A stretch of DNA of 64,000 nt from Ranitomeya imitator. Its lineage: Eukaryota. Every line of letters begins with the position of its first letter. The stretch's first letter is position 1. Below, piece by piece: positions 10,864 to 62,942 of this stretch. The position numbers and the translations under genes are program-made. A model generated the notes under the pieces. It searched no databases and was not told where the DNA came from. It was given only the letters and a program-made list of their open reading frames with translations. The stretch covers positions 621,488,001 through 621,552,000 of the forward strand of contig NC_091284.1 in assembly GCF_032444005.1 (NCBI RefSeq), given 5' to 3'.

Positions 10864-12147
10864 CCCCTTACCGGCATCGGACGTACTATACCGTCCGATG
10901 TCGGCTCCCCTGCTTTGATGCAGGGCTCCGCGGTGAGCCCGCACCAAAGCCGGGACATGTCAGCTGTTTTGAACAGCTGACATGTGCCCGTAATAGGCGC
11001 GGGCAGAATCGCGATCTGCCCGCACCTATTAACTAGTTAAATGCCGCTGTCAAACGCAGACAGCGGCATTTAACTACCGCTTCCGGCCGGGCGGCCGGAA
11101 ATGACGTCATCGCCGACCCCCGTCACATGATCGGGGGTCGGCGATGCTTGTGAATGGTAACCATAGAGGTCCTTGAGACCTCTATGGTTACTGATTGCCC
11201 GTCGCTGTGAGCGCCACCCTGTGGTCGGCGCTCACAACACACGTGCAATTCTGCTACATAGCAGCGATCAGCAGATCGCTGCTATGTAGCAGAGCCGATC
11301 GTGCTATGCCTGCTTCTAGCCTCTCATGGAGGCTATTGAAGCATGGCAAAAGTTAAAAAAAAAAGTTTAAAAAAATGTGAAAAAAATAAAAAAACATAAA
11401 AGTTTAAATCACCCCCCTTTCGCCCCAATCAAAATAAATCAATAAAAAAAATATCAAATCTACGCATATTTGGTATCGCCGCGCTCAGAATCGCCCGATC
11501 TATCAATTAAAAAAAAGTATTAACCTGATCGCTAAACAGCGTAGCGGGAAAAAAATTCGAAACGCCAGAATTACGTTTTTTTAGTCGCCGCGACATTGCA
11601 TTAAAATGCAATAACGGGCGATCAAGAGAACGTATCTGCACCGAAATGCTATCATTAAAAACGTCATCTCGGCACGCAAAAAATAAGCCCTCAACCGACC
11701 CCAGATGATGAAAATGGAGACGCTACGAGTATCGGAAAATGGCGCAATTTTTTTTTTTTTTTTTTTTAGCAAAGTTTGGAATTTTTTTTCACCACTTAGA
11801 TAAAAAATAACCTAGTCATGTTTGGTGTCTATGAACTCGTAATGACCTGGAGAATCATAATGGCAGGTCAGTTTTAGCATTTAGTGAACCTAGCAAAAAA
11901 GCCAAACAAAAAACCAATGTGGGATTGCACTTTTTTTGCAATTTCACCGCACTTGGAATTTTTTTTTCCGTTTTCTAGTACACGACATGCTAAAACCAAT
12001 GATGTCGTTCAAAAGTACAACTCGTCCCGCAAAAAATAAGCCCTCACATGGCCAAATTGACAGAAAAATAAAAAAGTTATGGCTCTGGGAAGGAGGGGAG
12101 CGAAAAACGAACACGGAAAAACGAAAAATCCCCCGGTCATGAAGGGG
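10864..12147. mobile_element. piggyBac-like non-autonomous element with an ATAT target duplication
   Basis: Termini CCCCTT...AAGGGG; ATAT at 10860-10863 and 12148-12151; near-identical inverted copy at 49638-50767. Confidence 0.8.
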
Positions 12148-14539: not shown

Positions 14540-15932
14540 CTAGATGGTAGCCTGATTCTAACACATCGGGTATTCTAGAATATGTATGTAGTTTATTTAT
14601 GAAGATTTTAGAATAATACATTGAATACACAGGATTCGGCTGGCCGCGACCAATTAGCGAAGCATGCTTCAAATCCCACTCCACACCGGACTGCGCCTGT
14701 TGCTGATTGTTCACGGCTGGCCACGTAGTATGTAGCACAGCCACGTAGTATATAACAGCCCACGTAGTATATTGCACAGACACTTAGTATATTGCACAGC
14801 CCACATAGTATATTGCACAGCCCACGTAGTATATTGCACAGGCCACATAGTATATTGCACAGCCCACACAGTATATTGCACAGCCTATTGCACAGCCCAC
14901 GTAGTATATTGCACAGCCCACATAGAATATTGCACAGCCCGCATAGTATATTGCACAGCCCACATAGTATATCGCCCAGCCCACGTAGTATATTTCCCAG
15001 CCCACGTAGTATATTGCACAGCCCACGTAGTATATTACCCAGCCCACGTAGTATATTGCACAGCCCACGCAGTATATTGCACAGCCTATTGCACAGCCCA
15101 CGTAGTATATTGCACAACCCACATAGTATATTGCACAGCCCACGTAGTATATTGCACAGCACACGTAGTATAGTGCCCAGCCCATGTAGTATATTGCACA
15201 GCCCATGTAGTATATTGCACAGCCCATGTAGTATATTGCACAGCCCACGCAGAATATAGCAATGTGGGCATCATATCCCTGTTAAAAAAAAGAAATAAAA
15301 TAAAAAATCGTTATATACTCACATTCCGTTGGCCCCCGGATCATGGTGAAGCGGTTACCAATGTTCCTCGCATGCTCCAGTCAGATGAGTGCATTGCGGT
15401 CTCGCGAGATGATGACGTTGCGGTCTCGCGAGACCGCTACATCATCATCTCGTGAGATCGCAATGCATGGGGCGGTCACCGGAATGTCGCGAGGAGCGGG
15501 AAAGGCCTGTTCTGGATCCGAGGCGCCGACGGACGGTGAGTATATAACGATTTTTGATTTTTTAAATTATTTTTAACATTATATCTTTTTACTATTGATG
15601 CTGCATAGGCAGCATCAGTAGTAAAATGTTGGTCACACAGGGTTAATAGCAGCATTAACGGAGTGCGTAACACCGCGGGATAACGCGGTCCGTTAGCGCT
15701 GCCATTAACCCTGGGTGAGCGCTGACTGGAGGGGATTATGGAGCGGACACTGACTGCAGGGAGGAAGTAGCGGCCATTTTGCCGCCGGACTATGCCCGTC
15801 GCTGATTGGTCGTGGCTGTTTTGCCGTGACCACTCAGCGACTTGGATTTCCATGACAGACAGAGGCCGCGACCAATGAATATCTGTGACAGACAGAAAGA
15901 CGGAAGTGACCCTTAGACAATTATATAGTAGA
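14540..15932 (-). mobile_element. Non-autonomous Helitron, family A
   Basis: Minus strand A|TCTACTATATAA...CCCGATGTGTTAGAATCAGG (hairpin)...CTAG|T; no TSD, A/T insertion site. Confidence 0.8.
14720..15255. repeat. 21-bp minisatellite (GCCCACGTAGTATATTGCACA) inside the Helitron
   Basis: About two dozen tandem units read directly. Confidence 0.95.
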
Positions 15933-26653: not shown

Positions 26654-29390
26654 CCCCTTCCCAACCTGTGACACAGCGTATGCGTCATGAAAGTCGGTGC
26701 CAATCCGACCTGTGACGCATATGCTGTGTCACAGAATGATCGCGTACCTGCAGATCGGGTGAAAGGGTTACCTCCCATTTCACCCGATCTGCAGGGACAG
26801 GGGGAGTGGTAGTACAGCCCAGGGGAGGGGGGGTGGCTTCAGCCCAGGGGGGAGGTGTCTTCACCCCCCCGTGGCTACGATCACTCTGATTGGCTGTTGA
26901 AAGTGAAACTGCCAATCAGAGCGATTTGTAATATTTCACCTATTAAAACTGGTGAAATATTACAATCCAGCCATGGCCGATGCTGCAATATCATCGGCCA
27001 TGGCTGGAAACACTGGTCTGCACCTCCCCACCGCCACCGATCCCTCCCCCAGTCCTCCGATCACTCCGGTACACAGCTCCGCTCCCCTCCGTCCTCCTGT
27101 CCGCTCCCCCCGTGCTCTTGTCCGCTCACCCCCGTGCTACAATCCCACCCCTGTGCTCCTGTAACCCTTGGGAAAATAAAAAATTCTGGGCTAAAAAATT
27201 ATTTTTGAGGAAAGAAAACGTATTTATTATTTTCACGGCTCTGCGTTATAAACTTCTGTGAAGCACTTGGGGGTTCAAAGTGCTCACCACACATCTAGAT
27301 AAGTTCCTTTGGGGGTATAGTTTCCAAAATGGGGTCACTTGTGGGGAGTTTCTACTGTTTAGGTACATCAGGGGCTCTGCAAACGCAATGTGATGCCCGC
27401 AGAGCATTCCATCAAAGTCTGCATTTCAAAATATCGCTACTTCCCTTCCAAACCCCGACGTGTGCCCAAACAGTCGTTTACCCCCACACATGGGGTATCG
27501 GCATACTCAAGAGAAACTGGAAAACAACTTTTGGGGTCCAATTTCTCCTGTAACCCTTGGGAAAATAAAAAATTCTGGGCTAAAAAATTATTTTTGAGAA
27601 AAGAAATTTTTTTTTTTATTTTCATGGCTCTGCTTTATAAACTTCTGTGAAGCACTTGGGGGTTCAAAGTGCTCAACACACATCTAGATAAGTTCCTTTC
27701 GGGGTCTAGTTTCTAAAATGGGGTCATTTGTGGGGTATCAGCAATGTTTAGGCACACAGGGGCTCTCCAAACGCGACATGGTGTCCGCTAATGATTGGAG
27801 CTAATTTTCCATTTAAAAAGCCAAATGGCGTGCCTTCCCTTCCGAGCCCTGCCGTGCGCCCAAACAGTGGTTTACCCCCACATATGGGGTATCAGCGTAC
27901 TCAGGATAAACTGGACAACAAAATTTGGTGTCCAATTTCTCCTATTATCCTTGGCAAAATAGGAAATTCCAGGCTAAAAAATAATTTTTGATGAAAGAAA
28001 AATTATTTTTTATTTTCATGGCTCTGCGTTTTAAACTTCTGTGAAGCACCTGCGGGATTAAAGTGCTCAATATGCATCTATATAAGTTCCTTGGGGGTCT
28101 AGTTACCAAAATGGGGTCACTTATGGGGGAGCTCCAATGTTTAGGCACAAAGGGGCTCTCCAAACGGGACATGGTGTCCGCTAACAATTGGAGCTAATTT
28201 TCCATTCAAAAAGTCAAATGGCGCGCCTTCCCTTCCGAGCCCTGCCGTGTGCCCAAACAGTGGTTTACCCCCACATATAAGGTATCGGCATACTCGGGAG
28301 AAATTGCCCAACAAATTTTAGGATCCATTTTATCTTATTGCCCATGTGAAAATGAAAAACTTGAGGCGAAAATAAATTTTTTGTGAAAAAAAAGTACTTT
28401 TTCATTTTTACGGATCAATTTGTGAAGCACCTGAGGGTTTAAAGTGCTCAGTGTGCATCTAGATAAGTTCCTTGGGGCGTCTAGTTTAAAAAATGGGGTC
28501 ACTTGTGGGGGAGCTCCAATTTTTAGGCACACGGGGGCTCTCCAAACGCAACATGGTGTCCGCTAAAGAGTGGAGCCAATTTTTCATTCAAAAAGTCAAA
28601 TGGTGCTCCTTCCCTTCCAAGCCCTGCCGTGCGCCCAAACAGTGGTTTACCCCCACATATCATGTATCAGCGTACTCAAGACAAATTGGACAACAAATTT
28701 TGTGGTTCAGTTTCTTCTTTTACCATTGGGAAAATAAAAAAATGTTGCTAAAAAATCATTTATTGACTAAAAAGTTAAATGTTCATTTTTTCCTTCCATG
28801 TTGCTTCTGCTGCTGTGAAGCACCTGAAGGGTTAATAAACTTCTTGAATGTGGTTTTGTGCACCATTAGGGGTGCAGTTTTTAGAATGGTGTCACTTTTG
28901 GGTATTTTCAGCCATATAGACCCCTCAAACTGACTTCAAATGTGAGGTAGTCCCTAAAAAAAATGGTTTTGTAAATTTCGTTGTAAAAATGAGAAATCGG
29001 TGGTCAAATTTTAACTCTTATAACTTCCTAGCAAAAAAAAATTTTGTTTCCAAAATTGTGCTGATGTAAAGTAGACATGTGGAAAATGTTATTTATTAAC
29101 TATTTTGTGTCACATAACTCTCTGGTTTAACAGAATAAAAATTCAAAATGTGAAAATTGCAAAATTTTCAAAATTTTTGCCAAATTTCCGTTTTTATCAC
29201 AAATAAACGCAGAATTTATTGACCTAAATTTACCACTAACATGAAGCCCAATATGTCACGAAAAAACAATCTCAGAAACGCTAGGATCCGTTGAAGATTT
29301 CCTGAGTTATTACCTCATAAAGGGACACTGGTCAGAATTGCAAAAAACGGCTAGGTCATTAAGGTCAAAATAGGCTGGGTCATGAAGGGG
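26654..29390. mobile_element. Large piggyBac-like non-autonomous element with an internal ~390-bp tandem array
   Basis: TTAA|CCCCTTC...GAAGGGG|TTTA; marker ATAAGTTCC recurs at ~27300, 27690, 28080 and 28465. Confidence 0.75.
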
Positions 29391-47995: not shown

Positions 47996-49499
47996 TGGAA
48001 ATAAATACATTTTTTTTATTTTTCCCTAACTAAGGGGGTGATGAAGGGGGGTTTGATTTACTTTTATAGCGAGTTTTTTAGCGGATTTTTATGATTGGCA
48101 GCCGTCACACACTGAAAGACCCTTTTTATTGCAAAAAATATTTTTTGCAATACCACATTTTGAGAGCTATAATTTTTCCATATTTTGGTCCACAGAGTCA
48201 TGTGAGGTCTTGTTTTTTGCGGGACGAGTTGACGTTTTTATTGAAAACATTTTTGGGCACGTGACATTTTTTGATCGCTTTTTATTCCGATTTTTGTGAG
48301 GAAGAATGACCAAAAGCCAGCTATTCATGAATTTCTATTGGGGGAGGCGTTTATACCGTTCCGCGTTTGGTAAAATTGATAAATCAGTTTTATTCTTCGG
48401 GTCAGTACGATTACAGCGATACCTCATTTATATAATTTTTTTATGGTTTGGCGCTTTTATACGATAAAAACTATTTTACAGAAAAAATAATTATTTTTGC
48501 ATCGCTTTATTCTCAGGACTATAACTTTTTTATTTTTTTGCTGATGATGCTGTTTGGCGGCTCTTTTTTTGCGGGACAATATGACGCTTTCAGCGGTACC
48601 ATGGTTATTTATATCTGTCCTTTTGATCGCGTGTTATTCCACTTTTTGTTCGGCGGTATGATAATAAAGCGTTGTTTTTTGCCTCGTTTTTTTTTTTTTT
48701 CTTACGGTGTTTACTGAAGGGGTTAACTAGTGGGACAGTTTTATAGGTCGGGTCGTTACGGACGCGGCGATACTAAATATGTGTACTTTTATTGGGTTTT
48801 TTTTTTATTTAGATGAAGAAATGTATTTATGGGAATAATATATTTTTTTTTTTTCATTATTTTGGAATATTTTTTTTTATTTTTTTTACACTTTTGGAAA
48901 AATTTTTTTTTACTTTTTTACTTTGTCCCAGGGGGGGACATCACAGATCAGTGATCTGACAGTTTGCACAGCACTCTGTCAGATCACTGATCTGATATGC
49001 AGCGCTGCAGGCTTCACAGTGCCTGCTCTGAGCAGGCTCTGTGAAGCCACCTCCCTCCCTGCAGGACCCGGATCCGCGGCCATCTTGGATCCGGGGCTGG
49101 AGGGAGCAGGGAGGGAGGTGAGACCCTCGCAGCAACGCGATCACATCGCGTTGCTCCGGGGGTCTCAGGGAAGCCCGCAGGGAGCCCCCTCCCTGCGCGG
49201 TGCTTCCCTGCACCGCCGGCACATCGCGATCATCTTTGATCGCGGTGTGCCAGGGGTTAATGTGCCGGGGGCGGTCCGTGACCGCTCCTGGCACATAGTG
49301 CCGGATGTCAGCTGCGATAAGCAGCTGACACCCGGCTGCGATCGGCCGCGCTCCCCCCGTGAGCGCGGCCGATCGGCTATGACGTACTATCCCGTCCAGG
49401 GTCAGATAAGCCCAGGGCACCTCGACGGGATAGTACGTCTAAGGTCACAGAGGGGTTAATATATATGGGTATTGGGTAGGTAGCCAGTGCGGTATGATG

Positions 49500-49543
49500 C
49501 ACCCCGACGCGCGTTTCGGACGCTTAGCTCCTTCGTCAGGGGG
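49500..49543 (-). ncRNA. Minimal type-I hammerhead ribozyme motif (mirror copy)
   Basis: CCCC-CUGACGA-AGGAGCUAAGCGUCC-GAAAC-GCGC-GUC-GGGG; stem III is the palindrome ACGCGCGU; activity untested. Confidence 0.7.
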
Positions 49544-49547
49544 ACTA

Positions 49548-49593
49548 CACCCCCTGACGAAGGAGCTAAGCGTCCGAAACGCGTGTCGGGGTG
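49548..49593 (+). ncRNA. Minimal type-I hammerhead ribozyme motif
   Basis: CACCCC-CUGACGA-AGGAGCUAAGCGUCC-GAAAC-GCGU-GUC-GGGGUG: 6-bp stem I, intact core, GUC cleavage triplet at 49585-49587; activity untested. Confidence 0.75.
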
Positions 49594-49637
49594 CATCATA
49601 CCGCACTGGCTACCTACCCAATACCCATATATATTAA

Positions 49638-50767
49638 CCCCTTCATGACCGGGGGATTTTTCGTTTTTCCGTGTTCGTTTTTCGCTCCCCTCCTTCCCAG
49701 AGCCATAACTTTTTTATTTTTCTGTCAATTTGGCCATGTGAGGGCTTATTTTTTGTGGGACGAGTTGTACTTTTGAACGACATCATTGGTTTTAGCATGT
49801 CGTGTACTAGAAAACGGGAAAAAAATTCCAAGTGCGGTGAAATTGCAAAAAAAGTGCAATCCCACATTGGTTTTTTGTTTGGCTTTTTTGCTAGGTTCAC
49901 TAAATGCTAAAAATGACCTGCCATTATGATTCTCCAGGTCATTACGAGTTCATAGACACCAAACATGACTAGGTTATTTTTTATCTAAGTGGTGAAAAAA
50001 AATTCCAAACTTTGCTAAAAAAAAAAAAAAAATTGCGCCATTTTCCGATACTCGTAGCGTCTCCATTTTTCATCATCTGGGGTCGGTTGAGGGCTTATTT
50101 TTTGCGTGCCGAGATGATGTTTTTAATGATAGCATTTCGGTGCAGATACGTTCTTTTGATCGCCCGTTATTGCATTTTAATGCAATGTCGCGGCGACCAA
50201 AAAAACGTAATTCTGGCGTTTCGAATTTTATTCCCACTACGCTGTTTAGCGATCAGGTTAATACTTTTTTTTAATTGATAGATCGGGCGATTCTGAGCGC
50301 GGCGATACCAAATATGCATAGATTTGATATTTTTTTTATTGATTTATTTTGATTGGGGCGAAAGGGGGGTGATTTAAACTTTTATGTTTTTTTTTTTTTT
50401 TCACATTTTTTTAAACTTTTTTTTTTAACTTTTGCCATGCTTCAATAGCCTCCATGAGAGGCTAGAAGCAGGCATAGCACGATCGGCTCTGCTACATAGC
50501 AGCGATCTGCTGATCGCTGCTATGTAGCAGAATTGCACGTGTGCTGTGAGCGCCGACCACAGGGTGGCGCTCACAGCGACGGGCAATCAGTAACCATAGA
50601 GGTCTCAAGGACCTCTATGGTTACCATTCACAAGCATCGCCGACCCCCGATCATGTGACGGGGGTCGGCGATGACGTCATTTCCGGCTAGTTAACTAGTT
50701 AATAGGTGCGGGCAGATCGCGATTCTGCCCGCGCCTATTACGGGCACATGTCAGCTGTTCAAAACAG
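49638..50767. mobile_element. Truncated inverted copy of the 10864-12147 piggyBac-like MITE
   Basis: TTAA|CCCCTTCATGACCGGGGGATTTTTCG...; matches the reverse complement of ~10965-12147. Confidence 0.85.
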
Positions 50768-51230
50768 TGTGTGTATTATTAAGCCTTTATTTCTGTAGGA
50801 GTAATAATGGATAGGTGTCTTATTGATGCCTTTCCATTATTAACCTGGCTTAATGTCACCTTACAATAGCAAGGTGACATTAACCCTTTATTACCCCATA
50901 TCCCACTGCTACTTGGGAGTGGGAAGAGAGTGGCCAAGTGCCAGAATAGGCGCGTTTTCCAGATGTGCCTTTTCTGGGGTGGCTGGGGGCAGATGTTTTT
51001 AGCCAGAGGGGCAATAACCATGGTCCCTCTCTAGGCTATTAATATCTGCCCTCAGTCACTGGCTTTACCACTCTGGCGGAGAAAATTGTGCGGGAGCCCA
51101 CGCCATTTTTTTCCGTGACTTAACCCTTTATTTTAACAACTAGAGTCCCCAAATTTTGCACACAGACACTTCTAACATTACTAGTGAGGGATATGTAAAA
51201 AAATAAGGGATATGAAATGGTTTACCATGT
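50768..51230 (-). repeat. Fragment of the composite family seen at ~7270-7730, inverted
   Basis: ORF 50779-51021 (-) is nearly the same peptide as ORF 7477-7701 (+). Confidence 0.8.
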
Positions 51231-51459
51231 GTAATCCGATTTTTTCTCAGCCCCATAGAATTTCATTGGCAATTCTCGGCCGAGATACGCTGACAATCGC
51301 AGCATGCTGCGATTTCACTCGGATCCTGAATACGGCCGAGAAAACAACGGATAATAGGAGCTGCCCCATTGATTAACATTGAGCCGAGTGCTATGCGATT
51401 TTTTTATCGCATTGCACTTGGCCGTATTACGGTCTAGTGTGACTCAGGCCTAAGTGAAA

Positions 51460-55681: not shown

Positions 55682-57643
55682 TTAAAAAGGTTCTGCATAA
55701 ATAGTCTGTTCACATTATTGCTCACTTCCCTAGCACTGAATAATCAACTTAAATCTGGGAGAAAATTTAGCAACAAGAGTTCTTTAATGCAACTAAAGTG
55801 CAAAAATTACTTTACACAATGTGCAATTTTTTAAATTCAATTTAGCTCTTCTCCATTGTTTCTAAACCCGAGACCCTTGCATAATAACTCAGAATTCTGT
55901 AATGAAGCGTTTGAAAATATGTTTTCTAAAACCTAACTTCTCAACCAGTGGTTGGTCTACATGAGCTAATACATACAGGAGGTATTCAGTGCACGCTCAT
56001 GTGCTATTGGGCAGCACAGTGTATTCTCATAGCCATTATGGTGATTTGCTTAAGAACCTTGATGTATACTGCTCTAACTCCGGCACCTTTTAGGCCTCAT
56101 TTAGACATTTATTATTCACACACGTGTTCTATCCGTGGTTTTCTTAGATTAAACATATCGAAACCAGTAAGTCTAACCTCTATTGTTGGTAAAATATTTG
56201 AAGGGTTTCTGAGGGATGTTATTCTGGATTATCTCAATGAGAATAACTGTTTAACTCCATATCAGCATGGGTTTATGAGAAATCGCTCCTGTCAAACCAA
56301 TCTAATCAGTTTTTATGAAGAGGTAAGCTATAGACTGGACCACGGTGAGTCATTGGACGTGGTATATCTCGATTTTTCCAAAGCGTTTGATACCGTGCCG
56401 CACAAGAGGTTGGTACACAAAATGAGAATGCTTGGTCTGGGGGAAAATGTGTGTAAATGGGTTAGTAACTGGCTTAGTGATAGAAAGCAGAGGGTGGTTA
56501 TAAATGGTATAGTCTCTAACTGGGTCGCTGTGACCAGTGGGGTACCGCAGGGGTCAGTATTGGGACCTGTTCTCTTCAACATATTCATTAATGATCTGGT
56601 AGAAGGTTTACACAGTAAAATATCGATATTTGCAGATGATACAAAACTATGTAAAGCAGTTAATACAAGAGAAGATAGTATTCTGCTACAGATGGATCTG
56701 GATAAGTTGGAAACTTGGGCTGAAAGGTGGCAGATGAGGTTTAACAATGATAAATGTAAGGTTATACACATGGGAAGAGGGAATGAATATCACCATTACA
56801 CACTGAACGGGAAACCACTGGGTAAATCTGACAGGGAGAAGGACTTGGGGATCCTAGTTAATGATAAACTTACCTGGAGCAGCCAGTGCCAGGCAGCAGC
56901 TGCCAAGGCAAACAGGATCATGGGGTGCATTAAAAGAGGTCTGGATACACATGATGAGAGCATTATACTGCCTCTGTACAAATCCCTAGTTAGACCGCAC
57001 ATGGAGTACTGTGTCCAGTTTTGGGCACCGGTGCTCAGGAAGGATATAATGGAACTAGAGAGAGTACAAAGGAGGGCAACAAAATTAATAAAGGGGATGG
57101 GAGAACTACAATACCCAGATAGATTAGCGAAATTAGGATTATTTAGTCTAGAAAAAAGACGACTGAGGGGCGATCTAATAACCATGTATAAGTATATAAG
57201 GGGACAATACAAATATCTCGCTGAGGATCTGTTTATACAGCATAGCCAGCCACTAGACTCTAAAACTTAACATTTAATATGTATACCTCTAAAATTATGT
57301 GTACTTTAAAAACAATTAGGTGCTCATGTTTAAACGTGCACTAGACAAGAAAAATGGCATGATCTCACCCAATTGCTGTCTCTCTTCTTGTTACAGATTC
57401 TTGTGCTTATTGAGAGCACGGCATGGGACGGAGACCAATAGACCTTTTCCAATGGGGGGGAGAAGAAAAGAAAAAAAAAAAAAAAAGATATAGGTAGGTG
57501 GGGGGGAAGGGTTTGAAGCTATCTTCCCTGTCGTGCCCCGTGTATAAGACTCCCGCCCTAACAAGGGCAGTCCCCAAGTTTGAGCCTACTTAATGAAGCC
57601 CTTTGGTTAATATAACCACCCTGGATGATATGTCCTCTTTCTC

Positions 57644-57688
57644 TTCCCAACGCGTTTCCCTCCCCGTTACGGGGGTTCATCAGGGGAA
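57644..57688 (-). ncRNA. Minimal type-I hammerhead ribozyme motif (mirror copy)
   Basis: Exact reverse complement of 57870-57914. Confidence 0.6.
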
Positions 57689-57869
57689 TAAAATGTCCAG
57701 GTTAAATGTCCAGGTTAATGGAGGTATTCTGCAGTGGCAGACAAAACCTCATTCAGCGGCGTCCTCCATGTGACTGCCTTATCCTCACATGGAGGACGCC
57801 GCTGAATGAGGTTATGTCTGCCACTGCAGAATACCTCCATTAACCTGGACATTTAACCTGGACATTTTA

Positions 57870-57914
57870 TTCCCCTGATGAACCCCCGTAACGGGGAGGG
57901 AAACGCGTTGGGAA
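57870..57914 (+). ncRNA. Minimal type-I hammerhead ribozyme motif
   Basis: UUCCC-CUGAUGA-AC-CCCCG-UAA-CGGGG-AGG-GAAAC-GC-GUU-GGGAA: 5-bp stem I, intact core, palindromic ACGCGU stem III, GUU triplet; activity untested. Confidence 0.62.
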
Positions 57915-58753
57915 GAGAAAGAGGACATATCATCCAGGGTGGTTATATTAACCAAAGGGCTTCATTAAGTAGGCTCAAACTTGGGGACTGCCCTTGTTAG
58001 GGCGGGAGTCTTATACACGGGGCACGACAGGGAAGATAGCTTCAAACCCTTCCCCCCCACCTACCTATATCTTTTTTTTTTTTTTCTTTTTTCTTTTCTT
58101 CTCCCCCCCATTGGAAAAGGTCTATTGGTCTCCGTCCCATGCCGTGCTCTCAATAAGCACAAGAATCTGTAACAAGAAGAGAGACAGCAATTGGGTGAGA
58201 TCATGCCATTTTTCTTGTCTAGTGCACGTTTAAACATGAGCACCTAATTGTTTTTAAAGTACACATAATTTTAGAGGTATACATATTAAATGTTAAGTTT
58301 TAGAGTCTAGTGGCTGGCTATGCTGGGTTGTTAGTTAAAAGTGGTCAGACGTGATTAGGAACGATACGTTCTGGTTTCTTTCTTTTTTCCTGCTGAATTC
58401 ATACAAGGATCTGTTTATACCAAGGAAGGTGACGGGTACAAGGGGGCATTCTTTGCGTCTGGAGGAGAGAAGGTTTTTCCACCAACATAGAAGAGGAATC
58501 TTTACTGTTAGGGCAGTGAGAATCTGGAATTGCTTGCCTGAGGAGGTGGTGATGACGAACTCAGTCGAGGGGTTCAAGAGAGGCCTGGATGTCTTCCTGG
58601 AGCAGAACAATATTGTATCATACAATTATTAGGTTCTGTAGAAGGACGTAGATCTGGGTACTTATTATGATGGAATATAGGCTGAACTGGATGGACAAAT
58701 GTCTTTTTTCGGCCTTACTAACTATGTTACTATGTATGTTACTATGAAACAAA

Positions 58754-61546: not shown

Positions 61547-62942
61547 TGGGGCAAAAAAGTATTTAGTCAGTCAGCAATAGTGCAAGTTCCACCACTTAAA
61601 AAGATGGGAGGCGTCTGTAATTTACATCATAGGTAGAACTCACCTATGGGAGACAAACTGAGAAAAAAAAATCCAGAAAATCACATTGTCTGTTTTTTTT
61701 AACATTTTATTTGCATATTATGGTGGAAAATAAGTATTTGGTCAGAAACAAAATTCCATCTCAATACTTTGTAATATATCCTTTGTTGGCAATGACAGAG
61801 GTCAAACGTTTTCTGTAAGTCTTCACAAGGTTGCCACACACTGTTGTTGGTATGTTGGCCCATTCCTCCATGCAGATCTCCTCTAGAGCAGTGATGTTTT
61901 TGGCTTTTCGCTTGGCAACACGGACTTTCAACTCCCTCCAAAGGTTTTCTATAGGGTTGAGATCTGGAGACTGGCTAGGCCACTCCACTCCGGGACCTTG
62001 AAATGCTTCTTACGAAGCCACTCCTTCGTTGCCCTGGCGGTGTGCTTTGGATCATTGTCATGTTGAAAGACCCAGCCATGTTTCATCTTCAATGCCCTTG
62101 CTGATGGAAGGAGGTTTGCACTCAAAATCTCACGATACATGGCCCCATTCATTCTTTCATGTACCCGGATCAGTTGTCCTGGCCCCTTTGCAAAGAAACA
62201 GCCCCAAAGCATGATGTTTCCACCACCATGCTTTACAGTAGGTATGGTGTTTGATGGATGCAACTCAGTATTCTTTTTCCTCCAAACACGACAAGTTGTG
62301 TTTCTACCAAACAGTTCCAGTTTGATTTCATCAGACCATAGGACATTCTCCCAAAACTCCTCTGGATCATCCAAATGCTCTCTAGCAAACTTCAGATGGG
62401 CCCGGACATGTACTGGCTTAAGCAGTGGGACACGTCTGGCACTGCAGGATCTGAGTCCATGGTGGCATAGTGTGTTACTTATGGTAGGCCTTGTTACATT
62501 GGTCCCAGCTCTCTGCAGTTCATTCACTAGGTCCCCCCGCGTGGTTCTGGGATTTTTGCTCACCGTTCTTGTGATCATTCTGACCCCACGGGGTGGGATT
62601 TTGCGTGGAGCCCCAGATCGAGGGAGATTATCAGTGGTCTTGTATGTTTTCCATTTTCTAATTATTGCTCCCACTGTTGATTTCTTCACTCCAAGCTGGT
62701 TGGCTATTGCAGATTCAGTCTTCCCAGCCTGGTGCAGGGCTACAATTTTGTTTCTGGTGTCCTTTGACAGCTCTTTGGTCTTCACCATAGTGGAGTTTGG
62801 AGTCAGACTGTTTGAGGGTGTGCACAGGTGTCTTTTTATACTGATAACAAGTTTAAACAGGCGCCATTACTACAGGTAATGAATGGAGGAAAGAGGAGAC
62901 TCTTAAAGAAGAAGTTACAGGTCTGTGAGAGCCAGAAATCTT
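61544..62942 (-). mobile_element. Tc1-family transposon 3; the TIR upstream of the transposase gene is missing or displaced
   Basis: TA|CAGTGGGGCAAAAAAGTATTTAG terminus plus a near-intact transposase. Confidence 0.92.
61761..62788 (-). pseudogene. Tc1 (DD34E) transposase, full length apart from one frameshift
   Basis: ORF 61949-62788 ([10 protein letters not shown]...GAPRK...WSDE...[13 protein letters not shown]...HDNDPKH) joins ORF 61761-61988 ([15 protein letters not shown]); duplicated CACTC at 61981-61990. Confidence 0.92.

What the first reader, a model, noticed from the sequence alone, without database searches (positions are those of the whole stretch)
49460..49633. 174-bp minimal palindrome that is little more than two back-to-back hammerhead ribozymes
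Seen: 84-bp arms with one mismatch. The plus strand gives CACCCC-CUGACGA-stem II-GAAAC-GCGU-GUC-GGGGUG, and the 6-bp stem I uses two bases of the central loop (49548-49549). The minus strand gives the same core with a 4-bp stem I and a self-complementary ACGCGCGU stem III. The arm sequence is unrelated to the 57-kb element, yet architecture and polarity match. Inference: a second family using the same design. The loop completing stem I suggests the inversion point lies just upstream of the ribozyme rather than at random.
Basis: partly seen in the sequence, partly recalled or inferred. Interest (0 to 1): 0.75.

Follow-up and report, generated by a model that had tools for sequence, protein, structure and literature searches.

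The report
Mirror-image hammerhead retroelement fragment in frog DNA
A 174-bp perfect hairpin in this frog genome is most likely a short, dead fragment of a Penelope-type jumping gene that went in as two mirror-image copies, each with a small self-cutting RNA motif; this layout is already known and common in this genome.

Summary
Arms 49460-49543 and 49550-49633 are 84 nt with one mismatch (G49509 against T49584, a CpG transition) and a 6-nt loop. Each strand carries a complete type-I hammerhead core reading outward from the centre.

The motif scores below Rfam's threshold (25.3 and 22.1 bits against 34). It does show every hallmark published for Penelope-like-element (PLE) minimal hammerheads: an extra base after A9, a G10.1-C11.1 pair, and a tiny self-complementary helix III that implies action as a dimer. 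A strict descriptor finds 3 such motifs in the window against 0.005 per shuffled window.

The tool's longer 101-nt arms are misleading. The outer 17 nt on each side are TTAA plus the termini of two very abundant TTAA-type transposons that flank the insert.

Contigs from public runs show the hammerhead core is multi-copy in this genome. At least 85 contigs leave the homology exactly at the fold-back point, so the palindrome is local.

Best reading (0.7): a head-to-head, 5'-truncated PLE or retrozyme-type insertion into a TA-rich junction. The twin ribozymes are a by-product, and a read-through transcript folds into an 84-bp hairpin instead.

This scan has already noted many such palindromes elsewhere in the genome. 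Whether the fold-back point is fixed relative to the ribozyme stays untested. Interest is low.

The parts
49460..49633 (.). The palindromic insert, at its widest (174 bp). If the TA run at each end is target-site duplication, the insert is 49467-49626 (160 bp).
   Evidence: sharp fall in contig depth at 49459/49460 and at 49634
49550..49633 (+). Right arm: the copy whose sense strand is +, with its 3' end pointing outward
49460..49543 (-). Left arm: the copy whose sense strand is -, with its 3' end pointing outward
49544..49549 (.). Central 6-nt loop, ACTACA. On the + strand its last two bases (CA) extend stem I to 6 bp.
49548..49593 (+). Type-I minimal hammerhead motif with predicted cleavage after C49587. 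Helix III is ACGCGUGU, with T49584 a C>T change at a CpG.
   Evidence: Rfam RF00163, 25.3 bits, E=6.5e-4, below gathering; fold
49502..49543 (-). Type-I minimal hammerhead motif with an intact self-complementary helix III, ACGCGCGU. Predicted cleavage is after the complement of 49506.
   Evidence: Rfam RF00163, 22.1 bits; passes the strict min-HHR descriptor
49456..49459 (.). TTAA next to the end of the left flanking element. It is the target-site duplication of that element and possibly also of the insert.
   Evidence: other copies of the element match as far as 49459 (loose ends)
49634..49637 (.). TTAA next to the start of the right flanking element
   Evidence: other copies match from 49633/49634 onward
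49638..50767 (+). Right flanking TTAA-type non-autonomous element, starting CCCCTTCATGACC. It is cut at 50767 by another repeat and is not part of the insert.
   Evidence: second copy at 12147-10964 (-), 13 mismatches in 1129 aligned bases
48923..49455 (+). Hairpin-rich 3' part of the left flanking element, ending ...GGGG at 49455. It is not part of the insert.
   Evidence: its end aligns with the 3' end of copy 2; hairpin array

Best explanation
A short, 5'-truncated 3'-terminal fragment (about 77-88 nt) of a non-autonomous Penelope-like or retrozyme-type retroelement was inserted head-to-head. The fragment carries a PLE-type minimal type-I hammerhead. The two mirror-image copies have their 3' ends outward and their truncated 5' ends joined at a 6-nt loop.

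The target was a TA-rich/TTAA junction between the termini of two very abundant TTAA-type (piggyBac-like) non-autonomous transposons.

The likely mechanism is inferred, not shown. The PLE enzyme cuts both target strands and primes reverse transcription on both. Alternatively, one cDNA snaps back on itself at or near the 5' end of its template. Either route gives a palindrome.

The hammerhead on each strand is a passive consequence of the inverted duplication. At this locus the ribozyme is not expected to act. A read-through RNA forms an 84-bp hairpin, and this type of hammerhead needs a second sense copy to build helix III.
For: 1. Palindrome and polarity: both hammerheads read outward from the centre.

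2. The motif meets the features listed for PLE min-HHRs in PMC4209133:
- a base between A9 and 10.1 (the A after CUGACGA);
- a G10.1-C11.1 pair;
- a 5-bp helix II with one bulge;
- a self-complementary helix III block.

3. A monomeric 2-bp helix III costs +1.1 kcal/mol, whereas the block's self-duplex gives -13.3 or -9.5 kcal/mol. This is the dimer-type architecture.

4. The strict descriptor finds 3 hits in the window against 0.005 per shuffle.

5. The hammerhead core is multi-copy in the organism's contigs. Summed depth is about 13,900 over the core, about 2,400 and 235 further out in the arm, with about 10 per single contig. In addition, 73 + 12 contigs leave the homology exactly at 49543, so elsewhere the sequence is not palindromic.

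6. The insert sits between natural termini of flanking elements, so it is a discrete insertion.

7. Published support:
- PLEs often carry an adjacent inverted 5'-truncated copy, and some clades prefer (TA)n targets (PMC8557442).
- A purified PLE enzyme cleaves and extends both target strands in vitro, and hammerhead cleavage is not needed (PMC11167929).
- Vertebrate retrozyme units of 51-972 bp derive from PLE pLTRs, and all seven amphibians sampled have them (bioRxiv 10.64898/2026.07.22.740005).

8. A second head-to-head hammerhead palindrome with a 15-bp target-site duplication lies 8 kb away.
Against: - Rfam scores are below the gathering score.
- No parent element, PLE RT/GIY-YIG ORF or individual homologue could be retrieved.
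- No unambiguous target-site duplication: only TTAA (4 bp) up to ATATATAT (8 bp). All of these are self-complementary, so they cannot be told apart from the arms. First-reader notes on other palindromes of this genome report 14-18 bp, and the one in this window has 15 bp.
- TTAA on both sides would also fit cut-and-paste transposition.
- Only contigs, not raw reads, were available, and none spans the whole palindrome.
- The order of events relative to the flanking elements cannot be told. The flank copies differ by 1.2% with 4 of 64 CpGs lost; the arms differ by 1 in 84 with 1 of 8 CpGs lost.
Confidence: 0.7

Rival explanations
1. A fold-back DNA transposon (MITE) of 160-174 bp that happens to contain a captured hammerhead in its long terminal inverted repeats. 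It would be moved by a piggyBac-type transposase (TTAA duplication) or a transposase that makes 8-bp duplications.
For: The insert is bounded exactly by TTAA on both sides, or alternatively by an 8-bp ATATATAT direct repeat. TTAA-type elements are extremely active in this genome.
Against: The termini (TATATATGGG... or GGGTATT...) do not resemble the CCC.../...GGG ends of the TTAA elements seen here. Both TTAAs are already accounted for as target sites of the flanking elements. Contig depth is very uneven along the arm, from 13,900 down to 235, instead of uniform as expected for a unit-length MITE family. At least 85 contigs carry the hammerhead without the fold-back.
Confidence: 0.1
2. A DNA-level inverted duplication (replication template switch or repair of a hairpin-capped break) of a solo hammerhead-bearing fragment that was already there. 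No retrotransposition would be involved in making the palindrome.
For: The arms have equal length and only a 6-nt spacer, as such events produce. The neighbouring elements are full of short perfect hairpins, so local palindrome formation may be common here.
Against: The duplication would have had to end exactly at the boundary of the solo fragment, next to an intact terminus of a flanking element on each side. The same head-to-head layout with a clean 15-bp target-site duplication, meaning a single insertion event, occurs 8 kb away. First-reader notes report it at other sites of this genome (mostly unchecked).
Confidence: 0.08
3. An assembly artefact, such as a chimeric fold-back read.
For: No contig in four public runs spans the whole palindrome. 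Palindromes are hard to assemble.
Against: Every one of the 30 bins is covered by contigs in run X1. The arms differ at one CpG site. The palindrome is short and embedded in non-palindromic flanks with natural element termini.
Confidence: 0.03

Closest known systems
Minimal type-I hammerheads of Penelope-like elements (Cervera & de la Pena 2014, PMC4209133)
   Same: CUGANGA and GAAA cores, an extra base between A9 and 10.1, a G10.1-C11.1 pair, a long helix II with a bulge, and a 2-bp helix III with a palindromic loop that implies dimeric action. The motifs occur in large numbers in an amphibian genome (about 9,000 reported in Xenopus tropicalis).
   Different: No link to a pLTR of a coding PLE could be shown here. 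The Rfam type-I model scores it below threshold. Cleavage is untested.
Tandem/inverted insertion structures of PLEs (Craig et al. 2021, PMC8557442; Frangieh et al. 2024, PMC11167929)
   Same: An inverted, 5'-truncated copy joined head-to-head with 3' ends outward, in a TA-rich target. The published enzyme cuts and extends both target strands.
   Different: Both copies here are truncated to the same nucleotide (within 6 nt) and are only about 84 nt long. There is no full-length partner, no recognisable 30-40-bp 'tail' and no clear target-site duplication.
Non-LTR retrozymes of animals (Cervera & de la Pena 2020; Li, Clavereau & Pollet 2026 preprint)
   Same: A short non-coding unit with a type-I hammerhead. 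The arm length falls within the reported unit range (51-972 bp). These units are thought to be mobilised by PLE machinery.
   Different: Retrozymes are defined by direct tandem repeats that give circular RNAs. Here the two copies are inverted, and no tandem copy exists in the window.
L1 twin priming and retroviral snap-back cDNA
   Same: Inverted cDNA-derived structures made during reverse transcription.
   Different: Twin priming gives unequal, non-overlapping inverted segments, not a perfect palindrome. The enzyme family is also different.

Membership tests
Hammerhead ribozyme type I (Rfam RF00163) | Score at or above the curated gathering threshold (34 bits) | tested here: not met
   25.3 bits (+) and 22.1 bits (-) in the permissive scan; no hit at gathering score
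Hammerhead ribozyme type I (Rfam RF00163) | Conserved core C3-U4-G5-A6-N7-G8-A9, G12-A13-A14, A15.1-U16.1, H17, with stems I and II and an open stem I | tested here: met
   All core positions are present on both strands. Stem I is 6 bp (+) or 4 bp (-) and helix II is 5 bp with one bulge.
Hammerhead ribozyme type I (Rfam RF00163) | Site-specific self-cleavage | not testable with these tools
   Needs in vitro transcription of monomer and dimer constructs. Only contigs were available, so RNA ends could not be seen.
PLE-type minimal hammerhead (PMC4209133) | [quoted passage not shown] | tested here: met
   CUGACGA is followed by A, then G...C closes helix II (criteria quoted)
PLE-type minimal hammerhead (PMC4209133) | Short helix III with palindromic 15.2-16.2/loop 3 (dimer-forming) | tested here: met
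   ACGCGCGU on the - strand. ACGCGUGU on the + strand still self-pairs through two G-U pairs. Self-duplex energies are -13.3 and -9.5 kcal/mol, against +1.1 for the monomeric 2-bp helix.
PLE-type minimal hammerhead (PMC4209133) | Member of a genome-wide consensus family with compensatory changes | tested here: inconclusive
   The core is multi-copy in contigs, but individual copies could not be read. The only comparison is with the 57-kb family, which keeps stems I and II with different bases.
PLE-type minimal hammerhead (PMC4209133) | Location in the pLTR of an element that encodes the PLE RT and GIY-YIG endonuclease | not testable with these tools
   No other copy in the window. The genome itself cannot be searched. 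The only RT ORF in the window matched Pfam RVT_1, and an earlier scan note reads it as CR1 LINE ORF2.
Head-to-head PLE insertion | Inverted 5'-truncated copies with 3' ends outward, inserted as one unit | tested here: met
   Polarity of the two hammerheads; the insert is bounded by natural termini of the flanking elements
Head-to-head PLE insertion | Target-site duplication flanking the whole palindrome | tested here: inconclusive
   The longest direct repeat is ATATATAT (8 bp), or TTAA (4 bp). Both are self-complementary and cannot be separated from the arms.
piggyBac-type (TTAA) non-autonomous transposon | TTAA duplication plus CCC.../...GGG terminal inverted repeats | tested here: not met
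   TTAA is present on both sides, but the termini inside it read TATATATGGG.../...CCCATATATA. The CCCC/GGGG ends belong to the flanking elements.
Non-LTR retrozyme | Direct tandem repeats of a hammerhead-bearing unit | tested here: not met
   Only an inverted self-match was found, with no direct copy

The most novel reading that the evidence does not exclude
The fold-back point may not be random. In this reading it marks the 5' end of a roughly 90-nt template RNA that begins immediately upstream of the hammerhead. Penelope-type palindromes in this frog would then record the 5' ends of the RNAs actually used for retrotransposition, and the hammerhead, or a start site or processing event beside it, would define the mobile unit.

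Hints: the centre lies 0-6 nt from stem I here. Several unchecked first-reader notes in this genome also place fold-back centres at or inside hammerheads.

Against: in the neighbouring 57-kb element the centre is about 95 nt upstream of the hammerhead, and one note places hammerheads at the outer ends of a 2.1-kb palindrome.
Probability: 0.12. Interest if true: 0.5.

Novelty: new member of a known kind. Interest (0 to 1): 0.2.

Why it matters
On its own this is a dead-on-arrival fragment of a known type of retroelement. Its small use is as a very compact example: an 84-nt arm made of a hammerhead plus about 45 nt of 3' tail. It shows how little template a head-to-head Penelope-type insertion can carry.

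It is also one data point for asking whether fold-back points cluster at hammerheads. A genome-wide survey in this frog could answer that, and the result would bear on the still unknown way PLEs make inverted insertions.

If transcribed, the 84-bp perfect hairpin could also feed small-RNA pathways against the family. That is inference only.

Tried and rejected
- Rfam at gathering score: no hit in the whole window.
- BLAST of the arm and of the whole palindrome against the window: only the self and inverted self matches.
- Earlier findings searched by sequence: blank.
- Two exact-pattern scans of metagenome contigs, one for the hammerhead core and one degenerate: 0 hits each.
- Ordering the insertion relative to the flanking elements by divergence: rejected. 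The flank copies differ by 13 mismatches in 1129 bases with 4 of 64 CpGs lost; the arms differ by 1 in 84 with 1 of 8 CpGs lost. These are the same age class.
- Unconstrained co-folding of two hammerhead copies gave only the trivial domain-swapped duplex and says nothing about a helix-III dimer. It was replaced by an explicit energy comparison.
- MAFFT alignment of the two hammerhead families misaligned the cores, so compensatory changes were read from the descriptor output instead.
- No contig showing an empty site (left terminus-TTAA-right terminus) appeared among the listed joints (17 joints were not shown).
- The 178-aa ORF at 48923-49459 over the hairpin array has no Pfam match and is taken as spurious.

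Full report
**What is in the sequence.** The region holds a near-perfect palindrome. The repeat finder reports arms 49443-49543 and 49550-49650 (101 nt, 96% complementary) around the 6-nt loop ACTACA at 49544-49549. The other three mismatches lie at 49448-49450 and 49643-49645. As RNA, either strand of 49460-49633 would fold into an uninterrupted 84-bp hairpin of -183 kcal/mol, z = -27 against shuffles. Chance is excluded.

**True boundaries.** The outer 17 nt of the 101-nt arms are not part of the insert.
- The right flank from 49638 starts with CCCCTTCATGACC. It is a repeat element with a second copy at 12147-10964 on the minus strand, differing by 13 mismatches in 1129 aligned bases plus indels. 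Homology begins exactly at CCCC. A third element start of this kind lies at 29390.
- The left flank ends ...GGGG at 49455, and this end aligns with the 3' end of copy 2.
- TTAA follows the left end (49456-49459) and precedes the right start (49634-49637). The string TTAA|CCCCTTCA recurs at other termini in the window.
- Contigs from four public runs confirm these limits. Summed word depth is about 1-2.6 million over both flanks and collapses at 49459/49460 and at 49634. Other copies of the flank elements run on into unrelated sequence at 49459 and at 49633/49634.

The insert therefore lies exactly between the termini of two tandemly oriented, extremely abundant TTAA-type (piggyBac-like) non-autonomous elements. 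The similarity of the outer arm parts simply reflects their terminal inverted repeats. Earlier notes of this scan describe such TTAA elements, and call the genome frog, poison-frog-like. I could confirm only the TTAA termini and a vertebrate-type transposon content: an RVT_1 ORF and a Tc1/Sleeping Beauty-type transposase ORF.

**The hammerhead.** Both strands carry a full type-I core reading outward from the centre.
- The + strand has stem I CACCCC/GGGGUG, then CUGACGA, an extra A, and a helix II of 5 bp with a UAA loop and one bulged G. GAAA follows, then helix III with A-U and C-G pairs round a 4-nt loop, then GUC, with predicted cleavage after C49587.
- The - strand is identical except for a 4-bp stem I and an intact self-complementary helix III block, ACGCGCGU.
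- The single arm mismatch is a C>T change at a CpG in helix III of the + copy.
- Rfam's Hammerhead_1 model matches both strands, but below its gathering score of 34 bits: 25.3 and 22.1 bits. Nothing in the window reaches gathering score.
- The motif does show all four features that Cervera & de la Pena list as marks of genuine PLE minimal hammerheads: a base between A9 and 10.1, the G10.1-C11.1 pair, palindromic 15.2-16.2/loop 3, and membership of multi-copy families (PMC4209133).
- A strict descriptor encoding these features finds three motifs in the window: this one on the - strand, and both arms of the 57-kb element. The expectation is 0.005 per shuffled window. The + strand copy fails only because of the CpG change.
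- A monomeric 2-bp helix III is unfavourable (+1.1 kcal/mol). The 8-nt block pairs with itself at -13.3 kcal/mol (- copy) or -9.5 kcal/mol (+ copy). This is the dimer-type architecture known from newt, schistosome and PLE hammerheads.
- Whether it cleaves is untested.

**Is it a repeat family?** No second copy exists in the window, and no individual homologue could be fetched. The contig data still show that the arm is multi-copy in this organism. Summed depth is about 13,900 over the hammerhead core, about 2,400 just 3' of the cleavage site and about 235 in the outer arm, with single contigs near 10. The core is thus shared by many more copies than the tail, as expected for diverse hammerhead families. 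Further, 73 contigs in run X1 and 12 in X13 match up to 49543 and then continue with heterogeneous, unrelated sequence (agreement 0.43). Elsewhere the hammerhead-bearing sequence is therefore not folded back at this point, and the palindrome is a feature of this locus. These figures come from contigs, not reads, and are only rough.

**Most likely mechanism.** The layout is two copies of one hammerhead-bearing fragment, 3' ends outward, 5'-truncated ends joined, inserted as a discrete unit. This is the known head-to-head insertion form of Penelope-like elements.
- Craig et al. describe inverted 5'-truncated copies adjacent to PLE insertions, and (TA)n target preference in some clades (PMC8557442).
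- Frangieh et al. show that a purified PLE protein cleaves and extends both target strands, and that hammerhead cleavage is not needed for insertion in vitro (PMC11167929).
- Li, Clavereau & Pollet argue that short hammerhead units of 51-972 bp in amphibians and other vertebrates are non-autonomous derivatives of PLE pLTRs.
- Eight kilobases away the window holds a second, unrelated hammerhead palindrome (57239-58405) with a clean 15-bp target-site duplication, so it went in as one event.

I therefore read 49460-49633 as a head-to-head insertion of the last 77-88 nt of such an element into the TA-rich junction between the two TTAA elements.

What is shown: the palindrome, its polarity, its boundaries, the motif features and the multi-copy core. 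What is inferred: the RNA intermediate, the enzyme, and whether the mirror image arose by priming on both strands or by snap-back of one cDNA.

**What the locus does.** Probably nothing. A read-through transcript contains one sense and one antisense hammerhead. It would form the long hairpin, not the ribozyme fold of about -16 kcal/mol, and it lacks the second sense copy needed for helix III. 'Two back-to-back ribozymes' is therefore a by-product of the inversion, not a design. A long perfect hairpin RNA could feed small-RNA pathways. That is speculation.

**Open points.**
- The target-site duplication cannot be fixed. TTAA (4 bp) through ATATATAT (8 bp, 49459-49466 and 49627-49634) are all possible, and all are self-complementary. 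This is shorter than the 14-18 bp reported in first-reader notes for other palindromes of this genome and the 15 bp seen at the 57-kb element.
- Divergence does not order the events, because the flank copies and the arms are equally young. Either the palindrome entered a junction between two adjacent elements, or the two elements later used the TTAAs at its ends.
Here the centre lies 0-6 nt upstream of stem I. The CA of the loop that completes stem I on the + strand suggests that this arm simply extends a little further into the original upstream sequence. In the 57-kb element the centre lies about 95 nt upstream of the hammerhead. Several unchecked notes of this scan place centres at or inside hammerheads, and one places hammerheads at the outer ends. 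Only a genome-wide tabulation can decide.

**Rivals.**
- A fold-back DNA transposon fits the TTAA or 8-bp flanks. It does not fit the termini, the uneven copy profile, or the many non-palindromic relatives.
- A DNA-level inverted duplication of a resident solo copy would need breakpoints exactly at the element boundaries.
- An assembly artefact is unlikely, given contig cover of all bins in X1 and the CpG difference between the arms. No contig spans the whole palindrome, however, and raw reads were not available.

**Verdict.** The kind is known, and this scan has already met it many times in this genome. It is a new member of a known kind, of low interest.

Noticed in passing
window 48923-49455, 50430-50767 and 10868-11320: The very abundant TTAA-type flanking elements carry, in their 3' part, a run of 8-10 consecutive, mutually unrelated GC-rich hairpins (stems 15-29 bp, loops 1-19 nt). 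The same set occurs in both copies of the right element. Their 5' part is A/T-rich with long T runs. I do not know what the hairpin array is for.
   Followed up: partly
window 57239-58405: A 1.17-kb palindrome with a 15-bp target-site duplication (AGGATCTGTTTATAC) and a minimal hammerhead in each arm (57870-57914 + and 57688-57644 -), about 95 nt from the centre. It interrupts a reverse-transcriptase ORF (55948-57270, Pfam RVT_1). Its helix II also has an extra A after the core, a UAA loop and a 3'-side bulge, like the motif studied here.
   Followed up: partly
window 12147-10868 (minus strand): The complete second copy of the right flanking element is flanked by ATAT on both sides instead of TTAA. 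This may be a non-canonical 4-bp target site for a TTAA-type element.
   Followed up: no
window 61949-62788 (-) and 14608-15162 (-): An ORF with Sleeping Beauty/Tc3-type transposase HTH domains, and an ORF with a weak match to the SPEN/MINT RAM7 domain (35.7 bits, below the Pfam cut-off of 108), possibly an exon of a host gene.
   Followed up: no
window 50767-51237 vs 7735-7260: Another repeat, 87% identical over 476 bp to a copy on the minus strand, truncates the right flanking element at 50767, in the middle of one of its hairpins.
   Followed up: no
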